Notes: generated by a model not told the origin, from the letters alone. Shown: positions 4,845 to 24,215, counted from the stretch's first letter. The stretch is 34,782 nucleotides of DNA from Octopus bimaculoides (GCF_001194135.2 NC_068988.1:79219839-79254620); one strand, 5' to 3'. Made by a program: numbers and translations.

Positions 4845-4975
4845 CGTACACATACACACACGCACACAAACACACACAGTGTCACAGACACAGGCACAAG
4901 CACATATACATATTCATACACACACACACACATACATACACACACATACACACACACACACACACACATACACGC

Positions 4976-5007
<32 letters not shown>

Positions 5008-5026
5008 GCAAAAATGTGTGTGTGTG

Positions 5027-5058
<32 letters not shown>
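4845..5058. repeat. (CA)n / (TA)n / (TG)n compound microsatellite
   Basis: Directly visible. Confidence 0.95.
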
Positions 5059-5758
5059 ATTGTAACAGAATAAATAAGGCAATGATATGATACTAAATAA
5101 GTGATTATCAGAACAAGTATTGAAAATCGCGAGATAAATAATCAACAGAATATCTAAATAACTAAATCAATTACAGAATAACACGCTAATTAAACAAAGA
5201 AGACAATGAAAGTGAAACTAAATGGTTGACAGAATATCAGAACCAGATAATGAGGGAATGACAGAATGACTCAATAATTATCTGAATATGAAAATAAGCA
5301 AATAAATAAGAGAATTTCAGAATATCTGAATAAATAATAAGGAATGAAAATAGCAAAATCAATAAGGAAATACTAGAAAAATTGCTAAATAAGTGACAGC
5401 ATACCAGAATAACAAATACAAAATAATGTCCAATTACATCGTGAGAGATTTTAGTCATTTATTAATATACTAAAACTGTTAAATGCATCTTTCATATTTT
5501 TTGCATATTTTCGTCATTACTGAACCACACCCTGTTCGCTGAAACAGTTTAGCAGTGAAACTAGGTGATTGACCAGATCACAGAACGAGGAAAATATTGA
5601 CACCTCACAGGATAACTGAAATGTGAATATAACAGCTTTTGTGTGATTTTAAAGGGCTGAAATTATTTTTCCACTTTGTAATTACGTAAGTTTCAACATA
5701 GTCTCAGGTCGAAACAACTACAATTTTGAAATGAAAATATATATATACATATATATAT

Positions 5759-6363
5759 AATGAGAAGCAAGTTACGCAAGTCAATTTACACAGAATATTA
5801 AATACATTTAATAAAAAAATGTACATTTGTATGGATATAAAATAATCCGATTTACAGAATATAAATGATATCAGGTGTTAAATGGGTCGAGTTTTACGAG
5901 TCCAACAGCTATTTCTTGGGATGGGGGTCTGCAATAATGATAGTTACTTGGATCCATTAAGGGATAACACAGCCTCCGTCTTCAGGAGAGAATTTTACAT
6001 TTGAGAAGTTGACAGGCCGGAGGTTAAAGTTGGAATGATTTTGTGGAGAACGAAGTGTGTTAAGAAGGGGAGTTAGGAGTGTTTAAATAGAGAGTAGTGG
6101 GGGGAGAAGAAAACAGATTTCAAGGTTAGGGTTAATGATGAGCCTAATGATAGTAGTAGAGGTGGAAGGTGGGAGGAAGGGAAAAGGTTGGTTTAGGTAG
6201 TATGTGAGTGATCACCTTTGTGATAGCTTGTATGAAGAGTTAAAGGTTGAGATAGTGAAAAGGGCTTGTTATTAATTAGGGGGAAGACGGAGGCGGTGTT
6301 ATCCGATAATGGATCCAAGTAACTATCCTATAAACTATAAACCTTTTGCTTGGCTGAGTGCTA
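5759..6363 (-). repeat. Left inverted terminal repeat of the PLE
   Basis: AATGAGAAGCAAGTTA...GGCTGAGTGCTA pairs with TAGCACTCAGCC (9177) ...TAACTTGCTTCTCATT (9770). Confidence 0.9.
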
Positions 6364-8619: not shown

Positions 8620-9006
8620 TTGTTGTTGTTGGCACTCCGTCGCTTACAACGTCAAGGGTTCCTGTTGATCCGATCAACGGAACAGCCTGCTCATGAAATT
8701 AACGTGTAAGTGGCTGAGCACTCCACAGACACGTGTAACCTTAACGTAGTTCTCAGGGATATTCAGCGTGACACAGAGTGACAAGGCTGACCCTTTGAAT
8801 TACAGGCACAACAGAAACAGGAAGTAAGAGAGAGAGAAAGTTGTGGTGAAAGAGTACAGCAGGGTTCGCCACCATCCCGTGGCTGAGCCTCGTAGAGCTT
8901 TAGGTGTTTTCGCTCAATAAACACTCACAACGCCCGGTATGCGAATCGAAACCGCGATCCTATGACCGCGAGTCCGCTGCCCTAACCACTGGGCCATTGC
9001 GCCTCC
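8620..9006 (-). mobile_element. tRNA-derived SINE inserted in the PLE 3' region, with 13-bp TSD
   Basis: Minus strand GGAGGCGCAATGGCCCAGTGGTTAGGG (box A) ...GGTTTCGATTC (box B), (CAA)n tail; ACTATCAAATCAT at 8607-8619 and 9007-9019. Homologous to 19470-19817. Confidence 0.9.
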
Positions 9007-9176
9007 ACTATCAAATCATATAGAATAAATAACAAGCCATTTTCACTATCTAAACCTTTAACTCATAGAAACTATCACAAAGGTCATCACTCACATATTA
9101 CCTAAACCACACTCACCACTTTCTGCCCATCTTCCATCTCTACCACTATCACTAGACTCACTATCACTAGAATCAC

Positions 9177-9770
9177 TAGCACTCAGCCGAGCAAAAGGTA
9201 TATAGTTTATAGGATAGTTACTTGGATCCATTATCGGATAACACAGACTCTGTCTTCCCCCAATTAATAACAACTCCTTTTCACTATCTCAACCTTTAAC
9301 TCTATAGCCTTCATACAAACTATCTCAAAGGTCATCACTCACATACTACCTAAGCCACACTTTCCTCTTCCTCCCGCCTTCCATCTCTACTACTATCATT
9401 AGACTCATTATTAACCCTAACCTTGAAATCAATTTTCTCCCCTCACTACTCTCTAAACACTCCTAATTCCCCTTCGTTCTCCACAAAATCATTCCGTCTT
9501 TAACCTCCGGCCTGTCAACTTCTCAAATGTAAAATTCTCCAATGTAAAATTCTCTCCTGAAGACGGAGACTGTGTTATCCATTAATGGATCCAAGTAACT
9601 ATCATTATTGCGGACCACCAAGTCCCAGAAACAGCTGTTGGACTCGTAAAACTCGATTCATTTAACACCTGATAACACTTATATTCTGTAAGCTGGATTA
9701 TTTTATATCCATACACATTTATTTAATATTCTGCATAAATCAATTCAATTTGCCTAACTTGCTTCTCATT
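9177..9770 (+). repeat. Right terminal repeat of the PLE
   Basis: Reverse complement of 5759-6363. Confidence 0.9.
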
Positions 9771-9802
9771 ACATTTACTAACTTGCTTCTAATTACATTT
9801 AC

Positions 9803-10001
9803 TGTGTGTGAGTGTATGCATGTGTGTGTGTGTATGTGTGTATGCGTGTGTGTGTGTGTGTGTGTGTATGTGTGTGTGTGAGTTCTTTGAATCTTTTGAT
9901 CCCTACTAAGTATCTTCTATACGGAGAATCTCTGGATCTCGTCTGTAGACTCTCTAACTCTCGCCCTCTTTCTCTTTCTTTCTCTTTCTCTGTCTGTCTG
10001 A

Positions 10002-10095
<94 letters not shown>

Positions 10096-10102
10096 ATATA
10101 TA
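9803..10102. repeat. (TG)n, (CT)n and (TA)n microsatellites
   Basis: Directly visible. Confidence 0.95.
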
Positions 10103-10732
10103 TATATATATATAATCGCGAAGACAGCTATACGCAATATAAAACCAAAAAGGAAATATTCCACCTTTCTGCAGTCGATCACAATATAAGAAGCCATTTC
10201 TATACTGATATACTGACAGCCGGAAGAGCTCAAGCTTACTTTCTTGTACCAAAAATATCGTAATATTATCACGTATTTAATCTTGTAGGATGGTATTCTC
10301 TGAAAGCTACGTAAATCCCATCATATATAACTTACCGCCCATTTTCTTTCTCCAACAGGTTTTTTTGTCTCATTTACTTTTCCTGCGATGAGGTATGTAA
10401 ATCAAGAGTAGCATAAGGCAAAACAAAAGCTACTGCTGAAGTAGAAGGAACACATGATACCCCAGCAGAAGAGCCAAGTTGTACATTGATATTACAAGGT
10501 TACAAGGTAATGCACTTATTTCTGGGTGACAGGGAAACAATAAAGTCATGAGAAATTTACTGTTGGCTTGCTTCCCTACGGCCGTTAAAATATAACAGCT
10601 GTAAACTTGTTAGCATAATCAATTCCTAGGAGAAAGCATTATCGCATATAGTGTGATGATTGATTTACCAAACTAAACTTTGGTTACATTATTTACATTT
10701 GACGGATAGTTGTCCTCATCTTGTTTGTTGTT

Positions 10733-10778
10733 AACACAACGTTTCGGCTGATATAACCTCCAACCTCTATCAGGTCTC
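10733..10778 (-). ncRNA. Degenerate minimal type I hammerhead ribozyme motif
   Basis: Minus: GAGAC CUGAUAG A GGUUGG...UCAGCC GAAA CG UU GUGUU. The core is mutated (CUGAUAG instead of CUGAUGA); homologous to 14567-14612. Confidence 0.5.
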
Positions 10779-10809
10779 TTGAGGAAATTTCAGACCTGGG
10801 TATTTTCGA

Positions 10810-10867
<58 letters not shown>

Positions 10868-10870
<3 letters not shown>

Positions 10871-10944
10871 CAGGTCACTGCCTGAAATCGTTCTCGGAAT
10901 CTTGGCGTTAGTAGCCTGCGCTCTTAACCACTACGCCATATGCC
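10868..10944 (-). promoter_or_regulatory. tRNA-like head (Pol III type 2 promoter), left unit
   Basis: Minus: GGCATATGGCGTAGTGGTTAAGAGCGC... with box A TGGCGTAGTGG and degenerate box B GAGAACGATTTC; runs directly into (TAA)n. Confidence 0.65.
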
Positions 10945-10950
10945 CACGGA

Positions 10951-10992
10951 CATATGGCGTAGTGGTCAGGAGCGCGGGCTACTAACGCCAAG
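10951..10992 (+). promoter_or_regulatory. tRNA-like head, right unit (cut by assembly gap)
   Basis: CATATGGCGTAGTGGTCAGGAGCGCGGGCTACTAACGCCAAG; 39/42 identical to the reverse complement of 10901-10942. Confidence 0.65.
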
Positions 10993-11829
10993 NNNNNNNN
11001 NNNNNNNNNNNNNNNNNNNNNNNNNNNNNNNNNNNNNNNNNNNNNNNNNNNNNNNNNNNNNNNNNNNNNNNNNNNNNNNNNNNNNNNNNNNNNNNNNNNN
11101 NNNNNNNNNNNNNNNNNNNNNNNNNNNNNNNNNNNNNNNNNNNNNNNNNNNNNNNNNNNNNNNNNNNNNNNNNNNNNNNNNNNNNNNNNNNNNNNNNNNN
11201 NNNNNNNNNNNNNNNNNNNNNNNNNNNNNNNNNNNNNNNNNNNNNNNNNNNNNNNNNNNNNNNNNNNNNNNNNNNNNNNNNNNNNNNNNNNNNNNNNNNN
11301 NNNNNNNNNNNNNNNNNNNNNNNNNNNNNNNNNNNNNNNNNNNNNNNNNNNNNNNNNNNNNNNNNNNNNNNNNNNNNNNNNNNNNNNNNNNNNNNNNNNN
11401 NNNNNNNNNNNNNNNNNNNNNNNNNNNNNNNNNNNNNNNNNNNNNNNNNNNNNNNNNNNNNNNNNNNNNNNNNNNNNNNNNNNNNNNNNNNNNNNNNNNN
11501 NNNNNNNNNNNNNNNNNNNNNNNNNNNNNNNNNNNNNNNNNNNNNNNNNNNNNNNNNNNNNNNNNNNNNNNNNNNNNNNNNNNNNNNNNNNNNNNNNNNN
11601 NNNNNNNNNNNNNNNNNNNNNNNNNNNNNNNNNNNNNNNNNNNNNNNNNNNNNNNNNNNNNNNNNNNNNNNNNNNNNNNNNNNNNNNNNNNNNNNNNNNN
11701 NNNNNNNNNNNNNNNNNNNNNNNNNNNNNNNNNNNNNNNNNNNNNNNNNNNNNNNNNNNNNNNNNNNNNNNNNNNNNNNNNNNNNNNNNNNNNNNNNNNN
11801 NNNNNNNNNNNNNNNNNNNNNNNNNNNNN

Positions 11830-11860
11830 TGTACAAATGCAAAACAAAAGTCAAACATAA

Positions 11861-11946
<86 letters not shown>
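11830..11946 (+). mobile_element. 3' end and (TAA)n tail of an R4/Dong-type non-LTR element
   Basis: TGTACAAATGCAAAACAAAAGTCAAACATAAAA(TAA)n is identical to the 3' end at ~14455-14490. Confidence 0.75.
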
Positions 11947-11949
<3 letters not shown>

Positions 11950-11991
11950 TGAGGAGGAGGAGGATGATGATGATAATAATAATTATAATCA

Positions 11992-13890
11992 CTACTACAG
12001 ACAGTACATGGATTTACCAAAGAAATAGATATGAAATTTGGCTTAGAAAAATTGGTCAAAGCAACCTTGAAAAGAGGAAAAACTAGTTAAGAGTAGCGAC
12101 ATCACACTAGATAAAGCCAATGAAATAAGAGAATTAGACCAAAGCCAGCCATACAAATATTTAGGAATCAATGAACTAGATAGGATACAACACACACAAA
12201 TGAAAGAGAAGATAAGAAAAAGATACAATAGACGAGTTAGATCAATACTAAAAACAGAGCTCAATCCTAAAAACAAGATAATAGGTATTAACACTTTAGC
12301 CGTCCCAGTTATAAGTTACAGCTACAATATCCTTAACTGGGCACTAAATGAACTAACCAAAATAGACGGGAAAACAAGAAAAATAATGACCCGATGTAGA
12401 ATGCACCACCCAAAATCTGACGTAGAAAGGCTATAAATACAACGTATAGAAGGTGGCAGGGGTCTTATACAGCTTGAAAACTATTATAAAATAACCACCA
12501 CAGGACAGCAAAAATACCTGCTTCAGAAGCAAGGAAAACTAATACAAATAGCCACAAAACACGAGCAAAACAAGAAACTGTTTTCAGTATTTAAGGAAGC
12601 TGACAAATACAAACAAGAATTCATACTACCTAACAAATATGAAGAAGAAGAAGAAGAAGAAGAAGAAGAAGAAGAAGAAGAAGAAGAANNNNNNNNNNNN
12701 NNNNNNNNNNNNNNNNNNNNNNNNNNNNNNNNNNNNNNNNNNNNNNNNNNNNNNNNNNNNNNNNNNNNNNNNNNNNNNNNNNNNNNNNNNNNNNNNNNNN
12801 NNNNNNNNNNNNNNNNNNNNNNNNNNNNNNNNNNNNNNNNNNNNNNNNNNNNNNNNNNNNNNNNNNNNNNNNNNNNNNNNNNNNNNNNNNNNNNNNNNNN
12901 NNNNNNNNNNNNNNNNNNNNNNNNNNNNNNNNNNNNNNNNNNNNNNNNNNNNNNNNNNNNNNNNNNNNNNNNNNNNNNNNNNNNNNNNNNNNNNNNNNNN
13001 NNNNNNNNNNNNNNNNNNNNNNNNNNNNNNNNNNNNNNNNNNNNNNNNNNNNNNNNNNNNNNNNNNNNNNNNNNNNNNNNNNNNNNNNNNNNNNNNNNNN
13101 NNNNNNNNNNNNNNNNNNNNNNNNNNNNNNNNNNNNNNNNNNNNNNNNNNNNNNNNNNNNNNNNNNNNNNNNNNNNNNNNNNNNAAAATCCCAGCAATGG
13201 CTGAGAAGCTCAGGACTCAAAGCAGAGACTGAAGGATTTTTAATTGCATCACAAGACCAAAGCCTCCCCACCAGAAATTACCAAAAACATATAATGAAAA
13301 GAAACATAACAAGTAACTGCAGAATATGTGGCGATGGACAAGAAACAATAAATCATATTATCTCTGGCTGCCCAGTCCTGGCTAAGAAGGAATATATTCA
13401 CAGACACGACAGAGCTGGGACCTATATACACTGGAAGCTATGCCAACACTATGGAATAACAACAGAAAAAAGATGGTGTAGGAACACGCCAGAAAAGGTC
13501 ACAGAAAGCGGGAAAGCAACCATACTCTGGGATATGCTAATACACACAGATAGAGAAATTAAGGCCAATAGGGCAGATACACTTGTCAGAGATCATGAAA
13601 AAAAAATGCTTTCTAATCGAATGTGGAATCTAAAGACAGAAACAATTCCTATCATAGTGGTCGCATTAGGTATGATAAAAAATATTCAGACAAATACATG
13701 ACAAAAACACCAGGACTTACAAATATATATAATATACAGAAAATTGCAATACTGGGCACTGCACACATCCTACGCAAAACACTTTCAATACAGTAACCAT
13801 AAGAGCATCACAGCAAACCACAACACATACCCATGGCACATAGAGCTGCGCTCGGTAGGGAAGTGAAAGCACGTTATAAAAATAAAACTA

Positions 13891-13893
<3 letters not shown>
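11992..13893 (+). mobile_element. 5'-truncated R4/Dong-clade (restriction-like endonuclease) non-LTR retrotransposon
   Basis: RT C-terminus DMKFGLEK, YKYLG, GGRGL; after the gap ETEGFLIASQDQ, CCHC knuckle CRICG...HIISGC, RHD and NRAD (mutated NRPD endonuclease motif); ends ILGTAHILRKTLSIQ* (stop 13794-13796), then 3' UTR and (TAA)n. Confidence 0.9.
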
Positions 13894-13971
<78 letters not shown>

Positions 13972-13974
<3 letters not shown>

Positions 13975-14485
13975 CTGAGCAAATATAAAGATCTTGAAAT
14001 AGAAATTAGCAAAATGTGGAATCTGAAGACGAAAACAATACCTATTGTCATNNNNNNNNNNNNNNNNNNNNNNNNNNNNNNNNNNNNNNNNNNNNNNNNN
14101 NNNNNNNNNNNNNNNNNNNNNNNNNNNNNNNNNNNNNNNNNNNNNNNNNNNNNNNNNNNNNNNNNNNNNNNNNNNNNNNNNNNNNNNNNNNNNNNNNNNN
14201 NNNNNNNNNNNNNNNNNNNNNNNNNNNNNNNNNNNNNNNNNNNNNNNNNNNNNNNNNNNNNNNNNNNNNNNNNNNNNNNNNNNNNNNNNNNNNNNNNNNN
14301 NNNNNNNNNNNNNNNNNNNNNNNNNNNNNNNNNNNNNNNNNNNNNNNNNNNNNNNNNNNTACAAATCCAAATATATGGTACCCTAGGCATAACACCTACA
14401 TGAACTTCTAACTTGTTGTCTCTTGAGGTCTCTGGGTGAGACTTGGATCCAACTTGTACAAATGCAAAACAAAAGTCAAACATAA

Positions 14486-14486
<1 letters not shown>
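13972..14486 (+). mobile_element. Further short R4/Dong copy with a different 3' UTR
   Basis: KLSKYKDLEIEISKMWNLKTKTIPIV before the gap; after the gap GTLGITPT* and a 3' UTR ending CAAAAGTCAAACATAAAA(TAA)n. Continuity across the gap is assumed. Confidence 0.75.
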
Positions 14487-14519
<33 letters not shown>

Positions 14520-14566
14520 TCGAAAAACACTTTAGGAATGAGAACCCAGGTTCGAAATTTCCCCAA

Positions 14567-14612
14567 GACACCTGATGAAGGCTGAAGGGTATATCCGCCG
14601 AAACGTTGTGTT
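14567..14612 (+). ncRNA. Minimal type I hammerhead ribozyme (PLE-type)
   Basis: GACAC CUGAUGA A GGCUGA-loop-UCCGCC GAAA CG UU GUGUU. Stem I is GACAC/GUGUU; stem II has 5 of 6 pairs; stem III is the palindrome ACGU; predicted cleavage after GUU (14607). Confidence 0.7.
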
Positions 14613-16121
14613 AACAACAAACAGGATGAGGACAAATATCCGTCAAATGTAAATAATGTAAATAATATACATAATTCCTCACACCTTAAATATAGAACTG
14701 TATACACTTTGGTTGTCAGTCTTCAAATGGCAACGATTACGTTAGCGACAGTTGTATCTAACGAATGGCAGAGCAATTAGAGAAGTAAATTCTTTGTTAG
14801 TACCAGAACAAGCAATAAAATGAAACGTAGCGACATAAACAAAGGTTTAATATATTCAGCATTCAATAGTAAGATGAATTTTACTACGTGTCTGTTGAAA
14901 TTCTTGCACTATATGACTTAGGTCTGACAAGAGCAGACACATTAATTTAAAACTTTCGGTCAACAAAAGTTAATTAAGCCTTACATTAGATAGCCTTGTA
15001 ATTGAACTGAATCTACAATTGAACTAGCAGCTTGTTTTAGTTTTGTTTTTGCTGTTTTAACTTTTATCAACGAGTTACAAATAATTTAGATGAATTTTAA
15101 CAATTAAGTGATTTGTGTTCAAATATCTTTGAACTAATGGTTTCTTTTTAATTAGTTAGGTCGTATTGATGTGAATCTCCTTAATGGCTTGTTTTTTTCA
15201 TCTATTTACATTTTTTATGAATAATTTACCATACGTGTATAATTCAAATATGCATTCCTCGTTAAAGTTTTTCCATCAAGATATTATATCCGCAATTATG
15301 GTACTGACCAGTAAAGAACTCTGTCGTGTGTTTTCATACTTTAGCACTTCAATATAATCTACTTCTAAAACTACTTTAGTCATACGGAAATCAATTTAAC
15401 ATGGACAATTTAACAGAAGGGTTTTCAATTACTTTTGGAAAAATTGTGCATTTTATTCTTTGAAACAAGTCATTGAATATCTGAAGGTGAAAATAACCTG
15501 AATGAAATAGAAATCCCTCTTTATACTACTTTGCAACTTCACTTCTATCATTTCACGCCTTAAGTTTTCATTGTATCACTTTACGTTTTCAGTTACCCTT
15601 CTACAATTTCATATCATCAATTCTCTGTATACCACTTTACATTCGCAACCGCTTTACGTTCTCAGTTTTCTTTACATTGTCTTCAAGTCATCCATTCTTA
15701 CACGGATTTATGCTTTCAGCTCCTTTTTACACCACTTTATATTTGTACCGATGCTAGAATTATTACAGAATCAGTTGACAAAATGCCTTATCATGTTTGG
15801 TTGCACCTCTTTATTCCGAAGCCAATTTTGCTTTTCATCTTCCCAACGTCGATCAAATAAAGTTGTGGTCAAAAACTGAAGGTGATTAAATCGATTTTTA
15901 ATATTGAGTTTCATTAGGCTTAGTATTTCATGGGCCCTTGAGTTTGTATGGGACTCTCCGATTTATCCAAGTTGCATTTTCACTCTTTTTGGGGACATTT
16001 CCTTGCTGACATTTATGTAGGTTTTTGCTTCGCCTTACTTTACAGGATTTGAACACACGTTGCGTTCATCTTTGTACTGGCCCAGCGTCTTGGGTCATTG
16101 TGACTAATATAAGAGTACACT

Positions 16122-19388: not shown

Positions 19389-19469
19389 CATGCGTTTAAC
19401 TCGTTATAATGTTGGTAGACATATTTCCCGATAGTTTCTGAATGTTTGTCACTTGTTACTACCTATGCT

Positions 19470-19817
19470 AGTGGAGGCGCAATGGCCCAGTGGTTAGGGC
19501 AGTGGACTCGCGGTCATAGGATCGCGGTTTCGATTCCCAGACCGGGCGTTGTGAGTGTTTATTGAGCGAAAACACCTAAAGCTCCACGAGGCTCTGGCAA
19601 CTTTCTCTCACTCTTACTTCCTGTTTCTGTTGTACCTGTATTTCTAAAGGCCAGCCTTGTCACACTGTGTCACGCTGAATATCCCCGAGAGCTACGTTTA
19701 GGGTACACGTGTCTGTGGAGTACTCAGCCACTTGCACGTTAATTTCACGAGCAGGCTGTTCTGTTGATCGGATCAACTGGAACCCTCGACGTCGTAAGCG
19801 ATGGAGTGCCAACAACA
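19470..19817 (+). mobile_element. tRNA-derived SINE, same family as 8620-9006, with 12-bp TSD
   Basis: Box A TGGCCCAGTGG, box B GGTTTCGATTCC, (CAA)n tail; ACTACCTATGCT at 19458-19469 and 19818-19829. Confidence 0.9.
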
Positions 19818-20519
19818 ACTACCTATGCTGCTGATATAGCTAGGTTTTATTTGTTTATTGTTTTGAATTATACTGTGCAGGAAAACGGCCAATTATTGTA
19901 CCGGACTTACTGCTACACGCAATACATATGTTAGCTGATAGATGTAATTACCATTCGTGATTTTTCTTTACGTTGTTTGCAATTTCCATTTTGATTATAC
20001 TTATTCGATCAACACTAGTTAGTAAGATTATTAAAAATTATTCTATTATTCCCGTTTTAGTGATCCTTCTTAATGCATACGTTTAATCAGCAAATATTTA
20101 TATTACATGTTTTTTTTTATTAAACATTGGTTTCAGTTTAATTATATTTTAATTTTATTTATTATGCACGAGCTTAATGTTTGTTTATCCTTTTATCGTA
20201 GTAAATTTCAGGTAATCAACTTGGATCCTGCTTTTTTGTCTTTTACATTGATTGTAATTCTAATTATGTAAGTTTCGTTCTCGTTTTATTTAATTCTATT
20301 TACGTAGTAACAAACAGATTTAATAAGTATAGCTTCTGTCAGCATATTCCTCATAATTTTCATTTCATTTATTTATCGCTATTTAGCATACTGAGTTTTA
20401 GATATTTATGACGTTGGGTTCTCGGTGTATTGGATCAGATATTATCCATTAAGCACGTGAAAGTAAATTCGTGTAACACACTCACATATACACATGCGTG
20501 CATGCATACATACATGCAA

Positions 20520-21249: not shown

Positions 21250-24215
21250 TAGAGTCAACAGGCGGGGTCCAGAGACCCTCAGTATAGAAGACACGTAGCA
21301 GTGCTCAAATGATTTGAACTTACACTCCGAAATCTTTATCAAGGACCAAGTCTGCGTGGTCAGGAATGGTTATAAAAACTGATATGAAGACAGTGATGCA
21401 GATAACCACGATTAGGCTTGTTATATAGAATAGATATATACACACATATGCACATGTAGATATATGTAGGGATATATAAAAAGACAAATGAAAATATTCA
21501 GAAAATATTCAAAATGAAAATATTCAGATGAACACTCATGTATAAACAAATAGTATATCTATATATATACATACATATTCAATTAGTGGTTAAATTAGCC
21601 TCATTCAGGGATGGTATCATCCTTAGATTCACTATTATTAACCAACCCCACTAACTACTACCTAACTAAAAAAACTATTAACATTAATATCTACTTCTGT
21701 TACAATTCTATTACACATAAGTTTAACATAGTACTATAATAATTCATTCTATTAGTTAACATATTGTACGCACAATGGATAATTTTCTACCAATATTTTA
21801 CCTTACACAATTGTTACCATTTATATCGGTTATATGTCTGTACTTATACATTTCATTTCATTTCATCCACTTAAAGCATTCATGCTTATATGTATGCATA
21901 TTCAGATAAACATAGCATTGAATAATATTTGGTAATATTTGTATCTGTTATTATCCGCTCCGCATAACTATTTTTATTAATAATATTAACGCGTTTTTAA
22001 ATGCAAAATAATACATGATATGCATTCACATTTTTACATTTATATATGTATTTTTTATATATTCACTTTTCCATATCTTTAGATATATTTTCTTTTTGAT
22101 TATTTCATTTTAATTATTTTTTATATTATTATACTACACCCCCCACTAAAAATATACCTAGTATCATTTTATAGTAATCACCCCTAACCTATTATAACCA
22201 TCATGAGCAACCTTCTGAAAATATCGGAACAAGCATAATTGCTATATGTATAATACTAGAATTTACTATAAGACTTTGAGTAGTCATACTTTGTAACACC
22301 TACGTAAAAATTTCATTATTATTCACCCAACTACATTCACTTAACCATATTAACACATTATTAATAACAAAATAATGACTGATATGCACTCACATTCTTA
22401 TATTTATTTATTCATTTCTGATTTTATTTTTATTTTATATTTTTTTATCTATACATGTTATACTTTTACCGTTTCATTTTAATATAATTACATGTGTGTA
22501 TGTACATGTATATGCATATGACTGTGTGTGGATATGTTGCTGGAACGAACATATGAGTGCTTATGTGTGTGTGTACTTGTATATGCACACTACAGTATTT
22601 ATAGGTACAAATATATATTGATATATGTACAAATTTTAAATGAAGGTGGTTTTATACTTGCAAACGTGTGTGTATAGCTGTTGCCAGTGCAGACATACTT
22701 GGCACATTTCTGCGTACTAGTGTACCGGGACATATGTAGAGATGTATGTCCAGTTAGATTTTTATGTGAATATTTTTTGTGTAATATAATCTCTGTACTT
22801 TAATAAACATATATTTGGATGTGAATGAATGTATATTTATACTTATATATGTATGTTTTTAGATGAGTATATATTCTTTTATATATACACTCAAATGTGT
22901 GTGTGAATATTTGAGAATGTATGTAAATGTAAATATATAGGTATACACTAGTATATATGCGCATGGTTAAGCACGCGTAATTATATATTGATGCGTAGTG
23001 TGTATGTGTACACGCACACACACACACATATATATATATTTATATGTGTGCGTGCGTGTGTGTGTGTGTATTAAAACTTGTCTAAACGTATTTAATAGTA
23101 CCATAAATGTATATCAATTGCTTTAATATTATTTAATTATTTTACTTTTGATTACATTGATAACTTAATTATATATATACTCCTTACTCTTTATATATAT
23201 ACTAGTATATATATATATATATATATATNNNNNNNNNNNNNNNNNNNNNNNNNNNNNNNNNNNNNNNNNNNNNNNNNNNNNNNNNNNNNNNNNNNNNNNN
23301 NNNNNNNNNNNNNNNNNNNNNNNNNNNNNNNNNNNNNNNNNNNNNNNNNNNNNNNNNNNNNNNNNNNNNNNNNNNNNNNNNNNNNNNNNNNNNNNNNNNN
23401 NNNNNNNNNNNNNNNNNNNNNNNNNNNNNNNNNNNNNNNNNNNNNNNNNNNNNNNNNNNNNNNNNNNNNNNNNNNNNNNNNNNNNNNNNNNNNNNNNNNN
23501 NNNNNNNNNNNNNNNNNNNNNNNNNNNNNNNNNNNNNNNNNNNNNNNNNNNNNNNNNNNNNNNNNNNNNNNNNNNNNNNNNNNNNNNNNNNNNNNNNNNN
23601 NNNNNNNNNNNNNNNNNNNNNNNNNNNNNNNNNNNNNNNNNNNNNNNNNNNNNNNNNNNNNNNNTATATATATACATATATATTACTTATTAATTATTCA
23701 ATTACTTAATTTGTTTTTGATTTTGACAATCAAATCTATGCTAAGTTATAAGTACATGAATATATAAACATATATATATTTCTTTTAAATTTCTCTATGT
23801 AAATAAATATAACATAATAAATATTTGATAATTATCTCCACTTTTACATTAACTAGACTTGTTATTGATGATATAAGTCCCCATATTTCTTTAAGCCAGT
23901 TCATTTATGACAAGATAAGAGTCCATCTTCTAGAAATGAAGTATCTTAATTTTCCGTTAGACCAATTTAAATTATATAGAAACGCTATCTTTTTTAAATA
24001 ATTACACCTTATTAACTAATCAAATTATATTGACCTTATGTGATCTATACCAACTTCGTTTTTAGGGTTGGGTGTATAACATTTTGAGTGTGTATGTATA
24101 TATCATTTGTATATATTTATATGTTTATCTGAATGTGCATACATATAAGCATGAATGCTTTAAGTGGATGAAATGAAATAAAATGTATAAGTACAGACAT
24201 ATATATATATGTACA

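What the first reader, a model, noticed from the sequence alone, without database searches (positions are those of the whole stretch)
10677..14714. Head-to-head element of tRNA-like promoter, (TAA)n and hammerhead ribozyme, inserted as one unit with a 9-bp TSD
Seen: reading outward from ~10946, the minus unit is tRNA-like head (10944-10868), (TAA)n, CATCGAAAA, hammerhead motif, AAATGTAAATAATGTAA. The plus unit starts with the same head (10951-10992) and, after gaps and R4 insertions, resumes (TAA)n, CATCGAAAA, hammerhead, AAATGTAAATAATGTAA plus a ~45-bp extension. ACTTTGGTT flanks both outer ends (10677-10685, 14706-14714). No T4 Pol III terminator lies between head and ribozyme in the left unit. 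Established: minimal HHRs mark Penelope pLTRs, PLE insertions often have inverted asymmetric ends, and SINEs normally borrow LINE tails. Inference: a non-autonomous Pol III-transcribed, ribozyme-processed retroelement mobilised by a Penelope RT/GIY-YIG rather than by a LINE. I do not know of a description of this family, but cannot search.
Basis: partly seen in the sequence, partly recalled or inferred. Interest (0 to 1): 0.9.

Follow-up and report, generated by a model that had tools for sequence, protein, structure and literature searches.

The report
Octopus SINE mobilised by Penelope-like elements
A short non-coding mobile element of octopus genomes joins a tRNA-like promoter head, a (TAA)n repeat and a Penelope-type tail with a hammerhead ribozyme motif, and its insertions look like the work of a Penelope-like retrotransposon rather than a LINE, which I did not find described.

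Summary
The window, probably from an octopus, carries two copies of a roughly 260-330 nt unit made of a tRNA-like head, (TAA)n and a hammerhead (HHR) tail. The copies are joined 5'-to-5' with 2 nt between them, point outward, and are flanked by ACTTTGGTT on both sides. The right copy is interrupted by three assembly gaps and by (TAA)n-targeting R4/Dong-like LINE fragments.

The decisive evidence is an independent locus without gaps in Octopus sinensis (L002), with an orthologue in O. vulgaris (L003). It has the same architecture: head-(CAA/TAA)n-tail in one line, an inverted 5'-truncated copy abutting the head, an R4 fragment nested in the repeat, and a 10-bp duplication AACAGGAAAA.

At both loci one arm ends about 41-46 nt short of the other. 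Head-to-head arms, an optional one-sided "tail" and 9-10 bp duplications are published signatures of Penelope-like element (PLE) integration. The HHR matches the PLE minimal, dimer-dependent type.

Pol III transcription, ribozyme cleavage and the autonomous PLE partner are inferred, not shown. Only three independent loci were seen, one of them only as a translated tail fragment. The closest known relatives are the schistosome Sm-alpha elements and the animal retrozymes. I rate it a new variant of a known kind.

The parts
10677..10685 (.). Left target-site duplication ACTTTGGTT
   Evidence: It is one of only two occurrences in the window and abuts the end of the left arm.
10686..10811 (-). Left arm: PLE-type 3' module in the short-end form, ending ...AAATGTAAATAATGT. 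It carries a decayed hammerhead motif at about 10733-10780 (core CTGATAG). The equivalent cleavage position lies between 10738 and 10737.
   Evidence: It is about 90% identical to the right arm. It lacks the 16-nt block and the last 44-46 nt.
10812..10868 (-). Internal (TAA)19 microsatellite of the left unit
   Evidence: TRF result. The microsatellite occupies the same position in all four units.
10869..10945 (-). Left tRNA-like head, full length (GGGCATATGGCGTAGTGG...). The A box TGGCGTAGTGG fits the consensus exactly. The B box is decayed (GAGAACGATTTC).
10946..10947 (.). Two-nucleotide filler (AC) between the two 5' ends
   Evidence: with coordinates rechecked.
10948..10992 (+). Right tRNA-like head (GGACATATGGCGTAGTGG...), cut off by assembly gap 1
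   Evidence: It is 41/45 identical to the left head.
11830..11947 (+). 3' end of an unassigned (TAA)n-tailed element (11830-11862) followed by (TAA)n. It is nested in the microsatellite of the right unit.
   Evidence: The 63 nt are identical to 14455-14517 (D19). This may be a redundant contig end.
11989..13893 (+). R4/Dong-like LINE copy 1. It is 5'-truncated, has stops and frameshifts, and spans gap 2 (RT C-terminus, CCHC finger, nuclease-like region). It is a secondary insertion into (TAA)n.
   Evidence: tblastn against P0057 gives 75-90% identity in colinear pieces. Pfam finds RVT_1 and zf-RVT on P0057.
13972..14487 (+). R4-like fragment 2 (13972-14049, last RT/EN residues) and, after gap 3, the 3' end of a (TAA)n-tailed element (14360-14487). 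The link across the gap is unproven.
14482..14517 (+). (TAA)n directly upstream of the right tail
14518..14705 (+). Right arm: PLE-type 3' module in the long-end form.
- Minimal type I hammerhead motif at 14567-14612.
- Helix I: GACAC pairs with GUGUU.
- Core: CUGAUGA at 14572-14578, followed by a bulged A.
- Helix II: GGC...GCC.
- GAAA at 14600-14603, then the palindromic insert CG.
- Predicted cleavage after U14607.
- The 'tail' extension is about 14660-14705.
   Evidence: The long 3' end ...GAACTGTAT is shared with L002 and with the copy inside P0052.
14706..14714 (.). Right target-site duplication ACTTTGGTT

Best explanation
The region is one insertion of a composite, non-coding retroelement of octopus genomes.

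**The unit (about 330 nt when complete)**
1. A tRNA-derived head with Pol III A and B boxes at the positions they occupy in a tRNA.
2. An internal (TAA)n/(CAA)n microsatellite.
3. A 3' module of about 190 nt of the kind found at the ends of Penelope-like elements. It holds a minimal, dimer-dependent type I hammerhead motif. About 50 and 100 nt downstream of that motif lie two alternative 3' termini.

**Proposed mechanism (inferred)**
- Each head drives Pol III transcription through the unit and into the flank. No T4 terminator lies inside the unit.
- A PLE RT/GIY-YIG protein supplied in trans binds the 3' module and nicks both target strands 9-10 bp apart.
- It starts reverse transcription at one of two internal sites on each strand. 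One arm therefore carries the 41-46 nt 'tail' and the other does not.
- The two cDNAs run to the RNA 5' ends, or stop early, and are joined head to head.
- The result is a pair of outward-pointing units flanked by a target-site duplication.
- Afterwards, the internal (TAA)n attracted (TAA)n-specific R4/Dong LINE insertions.

**Shown:** the anatomy, its recurrence at a second locus, the duplications, the asymmetric ends and the motif.
**Inferred:** Pol III transcription, the PLE enzyme, and any role for the ribozyme.
For: **Unit structure and symmetry in the window**

**Independent locus without gaps, L002 (O. sinensis), and its orthologue L003 (O. vulgaris)**
- It was found through an exonised tail copy.
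- The head is at 9836-9911, (CAA/TAA)n follows, and the tail is at 9980-10160.
- An inverted head, 5'-truncated at position 27, abuts it at the palindrome GCCCGCGGGC.
- The inverted tail is at 5989-6097.
- The duplication AACAGGAAAA lies at 5979-5988 and 10161-10170.

**Features shared by the loci**
- Three of four units start at the same nucleotide, seven bases before the A box, as in a tRNA.
- In L002 the B box reads AGTTCGATTCC, which is 10 of 11 consensus positions.
- At both loci the inverted arm ends in AAATGTAAATAA(TGT). The other arm continues 41-46 nt to ...GAACTGTAT.
- A third copy, inside O. bimaculoides protein P0052, shares the long end.
- No isolated heads or tails turned up in about 118 kb.

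**Agreement with published PLE behaviour**
- PLE insertions are head-to-head inverted copies with a one-sided extension of 30-40 bp and TSDs of 8-10 bp (PMC8557442; PMC3846280).
- PLE protein cleaves and extends both strands and starts reverse transcription at two internal sites that bound the 'tail' (PMC11167929).

**Hammerhead motif**
- It has the features of PLE minimal HHRs: a 5-bp helix I, a bulged base 5' of a 6-bp helix II, and a 2-nt palindromic helix III (PMC4209133).
- RNAalifold recovers helix II.

**Contrast with ordinary SINEs**
Ordinary octopus SINEs in the same window are single copies with 12-bp TSDs and (CAA)n tails.
Against: - No PLE RT/EN gene, and no PLE sharing the tail, was found in the window, L002 or L003. 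No octopus genome could be searched by DNA.
- Only three independent loci were seen. One of those is known only as a translated fragment. Copy number and the frequency of the dimer form are unknown.
- Rfam reports neither a hammerhead nor a tRNA, and ARAGORN finds no tRNA.
- The HHR core is mutated in one arm and deleted in another. No compensatory changes support the helices.
- Arms within a locus are no more alike than arms from different loci (84-90%). Co-insertion therefore rests on the duplications and the symmetry.
- The right unit of the window crosses three gaps.
Confidence: 0.75

Rival explanations
1. The unit is not a separate SINE family. It is the terminal (pLTR/3' UTR) part of an autonomous octopus PLE that happens to contain a tRNA-like segment. 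What we see are solo, 5'-truncated inverted ends of that PLE, or a sub-genomic transcript of it.
For: - Solo inverted pLTR pairs are common for PLEs (PMC3846280; PMC4209133).
- No genome-wide data were available to exclude longer copies.
Against: - Three of four units share exactly the same 5' end at the tRNA-like +1 position. Random 5' truncation would not give that.
- No unit continues upstream into coding sequence.
- No PLE ORF lies nearby.
Confidence: 0.1
2. Two unrelated families are nested by chance. One would be a Dong/R4-dependent tRNA SINE (head plus a (TAA)n tail). It would have inserted into (TAA)n tracts lying next to old PLE fragments.
For: - (TAA)n directly follows the head.
- R4/Dong-like LINEs that target (TAA)n are present and nested at both loci.
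- This may well be how the composite originally arose.
Against: - The duplications of unique sequence flank the whole head-to-head structure at two loci.
- The polarity of the microsatellite flips at the head junction.
- The heads abut 5'-to-5' with only 0-2 nt between them and no target (TAA)n there.
- No head+(TAA)n copy without a tail was found.
- The tail has no similarity to the R4 3' ends.
Confidence: 0.08
3. It is a DNA transposon or foldback element, for example a Mutator-like element, with long terminal inverted repeats and 9-10 bp duplications.
For: - The arms are inverted and the TSDs are 9-10 bp.
- Mutator families exist in octopus (PMC13282606).
Against: - The two termini are not inverted copies of each other. 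One end is ACATTATTTACA... and the other is ...GAACTGTATAC.
- The same asymmetry occurs at both loci.
- The inner junction varies: full length at one locus, truncated at position 27 at the other. That is typical of reverse transcription.
- The arms carry Pol III boxes and a PLE-type HHR.
Confidence: 0.04
4. It is an assembly artefact: a palindromic mis-join or a redundant contig in a gapped short-read scaffold.
For: - Three gaps fall in the region.
- 11830-11892 is identical to 14455-14517. The interior order may therefore be partly arbitrary.
Against: - The head-to-head junction and the whole left unit lie in one uninterrupted stretch.
- The arms differ at about 10% of positions.
- The same architecture is present in two assemblies of other species that show no gaps here.
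Confidence: 0.02

Closest known systems
Sm-alpha / Sj-alpha SINE-like elements of schistosomes (Ferbeyre et al. 1998; Laha et al. 2000; summarised in PMC6765202)
   Same: These are short non-coding retroposons that combine a Pol III promoter with a type I hammerhead ribozyme.
   Different: - Their ribozyme is the canonical, fast-cleaving HHR with loop-loop contacts. It is not the minimal PLE type.
- They are described as tandem or satellite-like arrays.
- The sources I could read report no PLE insertion signatures (inverted pairs, one-sided tail).
- I could not compare sequences.
Penelope-like elements and their non-autonomous derivatives (solo or inverted pLTRs, sequences mobilised in trans in Adineta vaga, MRC1 of Chlamydomonas; PMC3846280, PMC8557442)
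   Same: - Head-to-head inverted copies with the 3' ends pointing outward.
- An optional extension of 30-40 bp at one end only.
- TSDs of 8-10 bp.
- A minimal HHR close to the terminus.
- A palindrome at the inverted junction.
- An association with (AAT)n/(AAC)n repeats.
   Different: - There is no RT/GIY-YIG ORF.
- The 5' part is a tRNA-derived head with Pol III boxes, not a Pol II pLTR promoter.
- The 5' end is defined.
Animal non-LTR retrozymes (PMC7229834; bioRxiv 10.64898/2026.07.22.740005)
   Same: They are non-coding, HHR-bearing elements thought to depend on PLE enzymes.
   Different: - Retrozymes are head-to-tail tandem repeats processed into circular RNAs.
- No tandem array is present here.
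- Retrozymes have no tRNA-like head.
Conventional tRNA-derived SINEs, including the ordinary octopus SINE copies in this window (8622-9013, 19466-19819)
   Same: They share a tRNA-derived head with A and B boxes, a short length and the lack of an ORF.
   Different: - Ordinary SINEs end in a LINE-derived tail or a simple repeat.
- They insert as single copies. In this window they have 12-bp TSDs and a (CAA)n tail.
- In the element studied here the simple repeat is internal, the 3' end is a PLE module, and insertions are inverted pairs.

Membership tests
PLE-type insertion (non-autonomous PLE derivative) | Inverted head-to-head copies with the 3' ends outward, the upstream copy often 5'-truncated | tested here: met
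   - Window: both units are full length, with 2 nt between them.
- L002: the inverted head is truncated at position 27 and the junction is the palindrome GCCCGCGGGC.
PLE-type insertion (non-autonomous PLE derivative) | Optional 30-40 bp 'tail' extension at only one end of the insertion | tested here: met
   One arm is 44-46 nt shorter in the window and about 41 nt shorter in L002. This is slightly longer than the published range.
PLE-type insertion (non-autonomous PLE derivative) | Short target-site duplication (8-10 bp in Adineta vaga PLEs) | tested here: met
   9 bp ACTTTGGTT and 10 bp AACAGGAAAA.
PLE-type insertion (non-autonomous PLE derivative) | 3' module similar in sequence to an autonomous PLE (RT + GIY-YIG) of the same genome | not testable with these tools
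   No octopus genome could be searched by DNA. No PLE ORF lies in the window, L002 or L003.
Minimal type I hammerhead ribozyme (PLE type) | Conserved core C3-U4-G5-A6-N7-G8-A9 and G12-A13-A14, pair A15.1-U16.1, cleavage site H17 | tested here: inconclusive
   - Intact in the window's right arm and in the right arm of L002 (U7 changed to A, which is allowed).
- G8/A9 are swapped in the window's left arm.
- The core is deleted in the left arm of L002.
Minimal type I hammerhead ribozyme (PLE type) | Helix I of 4-5 bp, long helix II with an unpaired base at its 5' end, and helix III reduced to a short palindrome (acts as a dimer) | tested here: met
   - Helix I is GACAC/GUGUU.
- A bulged A precedes helix II, which reads GGCUGG/UCAGCC in L002.
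- The palindrome is ACGU.
- See, and the criteria in PMC4209133. No compensatory changes were seen.
Minimal type I hammerhead ribozyme (PLE type) | Match to curated Rfam hammerhead models | tested here: not met
   No hit even at E<=10. I expect this for variants without a real helix III.
Minimal type I hammerhead ribozyme (PLE type) | Self-cleavage | not testable with these tools
   This needs an in vitro assay with dimeric constructs.
SINE (tRNA-derived, LINE-dependent) | Internal Pol III promoter (A and B boxes) in a head derived from a small RNA gene | tested here: met
   - The A box TGGCGTAGTGG fits the consensus exactly, at tRNA positions 8-18.
- The B box AGTTCGATTCC in L002 lies within 1 nt of its tRNA position.
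- The tRNA covariance model and ARAGORN do not recognise the head.
SINE (tRNA-derived, LINE-dependent) | 3' end is a LINE-derived tail or a simple repeat, and insertion is a single copy made by a LINE RT | tested here: not met
   - The 3' end is a unique sequence, ...GAACTGTAT.
- The tail has no similarity to the R4 3' ends.
- Both complete insertions examined are inverted pairs.
Non-LTR retrozyme | Head-to-tail tandem repeats of an HHR-bearing monomer | tested here: not met
   TRF finds only microsatellites. The two HHR motifs lie on opposite strands.
Dong/R4-dependent SINE | (TAA)n at the 3' end and insertion into (TAA)n targets | tested here: not met
   (TAA)n is internal and the outer flanks are unique sequence.
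TIR DNA transposon (Mutator-like or foldback) | Termini that are inverted repeats of each other right up to the TSD | tested here: not met
   The termini differ at both loci.

The most novel reading that the evidence does not exclude
This may be the first recognised true SINE family that is mobilised by Penelope-like elements instead of LINEs. A true SINE here means a tRNA-type Pol III head with a defined 5' end.
- The PLE enzyme starts reverse transcription inside the RNA. That would define the element's 3' end on read-through Pol III transcripts that have no terminator.
- Priming on both DNA strands would make head-to-head double insertions. This may be helped by pairing of two template RNAs through the palindromic hammerhead helix III.
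- Such elements could account for part of the very large 'unclassified SINE' fraction of octopus genomes.
Probability: 0.4. Interest if true: 0.8.

Novelty: new variant of a known kind. Interest (0 to 1): 0.68.

Why it matters
- SINEs are defined by their dependence on LINE reverse transcriptases. A tRNA-headed SINE that uses the PLE machinery would widen that definition.
- It would give PLEs, a poorly understood retroelement class, a short natural template of about 330 nt. Its two 3' termini, defined 5' end and dimer junctions can be read directly from genomes.
- It offers a compact substrate for the in vitro PLE integration assay.
- It could also be used to ask what minimal hammerheads do.
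- Octopus genomes are dominated by SINEs, and hundreds of those families are unclassified. Recognising PLE-dependent ones would improve annotation.
- One copy has already been recruited as an alternative first coding exon of an O. sinensis gene.

Tried and rejected
- **RNA models.** Rfam scans of the whole window, the right tail and the L002 unit gave no hammerhead or tRNA hit. The microRNA hits are (AC)n/(AT)n artefacts. ARAGORN found no tRNA.
- **Folding.** Single-sequence folding of the HHR region prefers a competing hairpin, GUUGU/ACAAC, and does not return the hammerhead fold.
- **Protein searches.**
  - A search with the antisense tail peptide gave one weak hit, P0052. Its locus is not on record.
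  - The six-frame query gave only P0053. P0053 itself is not on record, but other members of its cluster led to L002 and L003.
- **Contig look-ups.**
  - The look-up of a window ORF found nothing.
  - P0002 gave only a 1.1-kb contig.
  - P0040 led to a locus that is not octopus and has no copies.
- **Collection scan.** The metagenome scan for the conserved tail block returned nothing.
- **Empty sites.** Joining the flanks found no paralogous empty site.
- **PLE genes.** No PLE ORFs lie in the window or in L002.
- **Arm identities.** Identities between arms within and between loci do not discriminate between the models.
- **Explanations rejected.** Twin priming, because the inverted part duplicates the direct part rather than preceding it. 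Also a LINE-borrowed tail, a TIR transposon and an assembly fold-back.


Full report
**1. Observation**

- On the minus strand, a tRNA-like head (10945-10869) is followed by (TAA)19 (10868-10812), CATCGAAAA, and a tail that ends at 10686.
- Two nucleotides (AC, 10946-10947) separate its 5' end from a second head on the plus strand (10948-10992). That head runs into gap 1.
- On the right, (TAA)n (14482-14517) precedes CATCGAAAA and a 188-nt tail (14518-14705).
- The tail arms are about 90% identical (I14). The heads are 41/45 identical.
- Each diagnostic 22-mer occurs exactly twice in the window and never in shuffles.
- ACTTTGGTT occurs only at 10677-10685 and 14706-14714, abutting both outer ends.

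Corrections:
- Only the right arm has an intact hammerhead core (CTGATGA...GAAAC). The left arm reads CTGATAG.
- The left arm lacks a 16-nt block and the last 44-46 nt.
- The right (TAA)n is preceded by the 3' end of another (TAA)n-tailed element, not by the head.

**2. Gaps and interior**

The window has nine N runs.

- The interior, 11989-14487, consists of fragments of an RT/REL-endonuclease LINE. All are in plus orientation and each is followed by (TAA)n.
- The closest proteins are P0001 and P0057 (73-90% identical; Pfam RVT_1 and zf-RVT).
- Octopus genomes are reported to hold active Dong-R4 families (PMC8967140, PMC13282606).
- Gap 2 lies inside one LINE copy. Its two sides are colinear with P0057 residues 209-398 and 452-646, so about 159 nt are missing where 496 N are written.
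- Gaps 1 and 3 cannot be bridged.
- The 63 nt at 11830-11892 are identical to 14455-14517, so the interior order may be partly arbitrary.
- None of this affects the left unit, which has no gaps, or the loci described next.

**3. Which organism, and a second locus**

No tool searches eukaryotic genomes by DNA, so I translated the element in all frames and searched the protein collection.

- The antisense tail hit an Octopus bimaculoides gene model, P0052.
- The sense tail hit the N-terminus of Octopus sinensis LOC115224785 isoform X2, P0053.
- Members of that protein's cluster gave 47 kb of O. sinensis DNA (L002) and the orthologous 36 kb of O. vulgaris DNA (L003). Neither contains any N.

L002 was chosen only because it contained a tail. 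It shows the whole architecture again:

- A full head at 9836-9911, about 70 nt of (CAA/TAA)n, then CATCGAAAA and a tail at 9980-10160.
- Directly upstream of that head, an inverted head truncated at position 27 (9786-9835). It is joined at the perfect palindrome GCCCGCGGGC and is followed leftwards by (TTA/TTG)n.
- Then nested repeats, including a 5'-truncated R4 copy in the same orientation as that arm.
- Finally the inverted tail at 5989-6097.
- AACAGGAAAA abuts both outer ends (5979-5988 and 10161-10170).

Profile searches found no other head or tail in the window, L002 or L003. The head, the microsatellite and the tail are therefore one transposed unit, and the head-to-head pair with a duplication recurs.

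**4. The asymmetric ends**

- At both loci the inverted arm stops inside AAATGTAAATAA(TGT).
- The other arm continues 41-46 nt to ...TAGAACTGTAT.
- The copy inside P0052 also reaches this long end and then diverges.
The short end is a second, recurrent terminus.

**5. What it works like**

These are published hallmarks of Penelope-like elements.

- Craig et al. describe an inverted 5'-truncated copy adjacent to the 5' end, and a 30-40 bp "tail" often present at one end only (PMC8557442).
- Arkhipova et al. report inverted pLTRs with TSDs of 8, 9 and 10 bp. They also report a 31-bp tail on one inverted arm, palindromes at head-to-head junctions, trans-mobilisation of unrelated sequence by pLTRs, and capture of (AAT)n/(AAC)n tracts (PMC3846280).
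- Frangieh et al. showed in vitro that a PLE protein cleaves and extends both DNA strands. It starts reverse transcription at two adjacent internal sites, and the sequence between those sites is the tail (PMC11167929).

The octopus element fits every one of these points.

The hammerhead motif also matches the PLE minimal type (PMC4209133):
- helix I of 5 bp;
- an unpaired base 5' of a long helix II (GGCUGG/UCAGCC in L002, recovered by RNAalifold);
- helix III reduced to the 2-nt palindromic insert CG, so that only a dimer could form it.

Cleavage would fall after GUU at 14607.

**6. The head**

- The A box TGGCGTAGTGG fits TRGCNNAGTGG exactly, at tRNA positions 8-18.
- The L002 copy has AGTTCGATTCC within 1 nt of the tRNA position of the B box.
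- A D-arm can be drawn, but the rest of the cloverleaf is gone. Neither ARAGORN nor the Rfam tRNA model accepts it.
- Three of four units start at the same G, seven bases before the A box. That indicates a defined transcription start rather than random truncation.

**7. Mechanism**

The steps are marked as shown or inferred under Best explanation. In outline:
- Pol III reads from the head through the unit into the flank. The first T4 run lies about 95-175 nt beyond the element in the window.
- A PLE RT/EN supplied in trans binds the 3' module and nicks both strands 9-10 bp apart.
- It primes at the long site on one strand and at the short site on the other.
- The two cDNAs are joined at their 3' ends, with a 2-nt filler in the window and a palindrome in L002.

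The role of the hammerhead is open. Cleavage would cut the promoter off the 3' module, and it was dispensable for PLE insertion in vitro. The motif may be a passenger, part of the protein-binding fold, or a device for pairing two RNAs. The similarity of P0052's copy stops within about 2 nt of the predicted cleavage site. That is a lead, but it could simply be an exon edge.

**8. Rivals**

- A chance nesting of an R4-dependent SINE next to PLE debris fails on the duplications, the polarity flip of the microsatellite and the 5'-to-5' abutment. It may still describe how the composite first arose.
- A TIR transposon fails because the termini are not inverted repeats of each other.
- An assembly artefact fails on the roughly 10% arm divergence and on the two other assemblies.
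- I cannot exclude that the unit is the terminal part, or a sub-genomic transcript, of an autonomous PLE.

**9. Novelty**

- Known relatives are the schistosome Sm-alpha/Sj-alpha elements (Pol III promoter plus canonical HHR; PMC6765202), animal retrozymes and non-autonomous PLE derivatives.
- Eight literature searches found no tRNA-headed SINE attributed to PLE machinery. A 2026 O. vulgaris repeat annotation lists 893 "unclassified SINE" families and active Penelope families, but draws no such link.
- Repbase and Dfam could not be consulted.

I rate it a new variant of a known kind. The evidence rests on three loci and on no enzyme.

Noticed in passing
L002 10001-10111 (O. sinensis CM016884.1): The sense strand of the element's 3' module, including the hammerhead motif, forms the first coding exon of LOC115224785 isoform X2 (MRTQVRNFPKTPEEGWRVYQPKRCVNNKHDEDNYPSI). 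A GTAAGT splice donor has arisen in the AAATGTAAAT region. The element has therefore been recruited as an alternative first exon.
   Followed up: partly
window 8622-9013 (-) and 19466-19819 (+); L002 38843-39035: These are copies of an ordinary octopus tRNA-derived SINE, with head GGCGCAATGGCCCAGTGGTTAGGG... and a (CAA)n tail. The two window copies are single insertions with 12-bp TSDs (CTATCAAATCAT and AGCATAGGTAGT). Together they explain the long inverted repeat I1/I2.
   Followed up: partly
window 11830-11892 and 14455-14517: A 63-nt stretch (TGTACAAATGCAAAACAAAAGTCAAACATAAAA + (TAA)n) is 100% identical at both places. The first copy starts right at a gap edge. It is either two copies of an unassigned (TAA)n-tailed element or a redundant contig end.
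   Followed up: partly
window 11989-14051; L002 6213-6415: At both loci, R4/Dong-like LINE fragments sit inside the element's internal (TAA)n, in the same orientation as the arm that hosts them. The element's microsatellite seems to act as a landing pad for (TAA)n-specific LINEs.
   Followed up: partly
P0052 (UniRef A0A0L8H9T6, O. bimaculoides): This gene model contains an antisense copy of the tail. The copy reaches the long 3' end, and its similarity stops within about 2 nt of the predicted hammerhead cleavage site. That could be a retroposed cleavage product or just an exon boundary. The DNA could not be fetched.
   Followed up: partly
L002 6415-6800 and 7581-7960; 7330-7578 and 9505-9751: Two unclassified repeat families are duplicated inside the L002 insertion. 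One starts ACTAGCAGTATCGCCCGGCGTTGCTCGGG. The other ends ...GGCAGATAAAATCTGCCTTTTATAATA next to the (TTA)n.
   Followed up: no
window 6096-6237, 9024-9160 and 9259-9475: Another short repeat family has copies in opposite orientations at 83-87% identity (I3).
   Followed up: no
window 4938-5059, 23004-23071 and elsewhere: Every Rfam microRNA or snoRNA match below its gathering score lies on (AC)n/(AT)n low-complexity sequence and is an artefact. The window is very rich in microsatellites: (AC)n, (AG)n, (GATA)n, (TAA)n and (GAA)n.
   Followed up: yes
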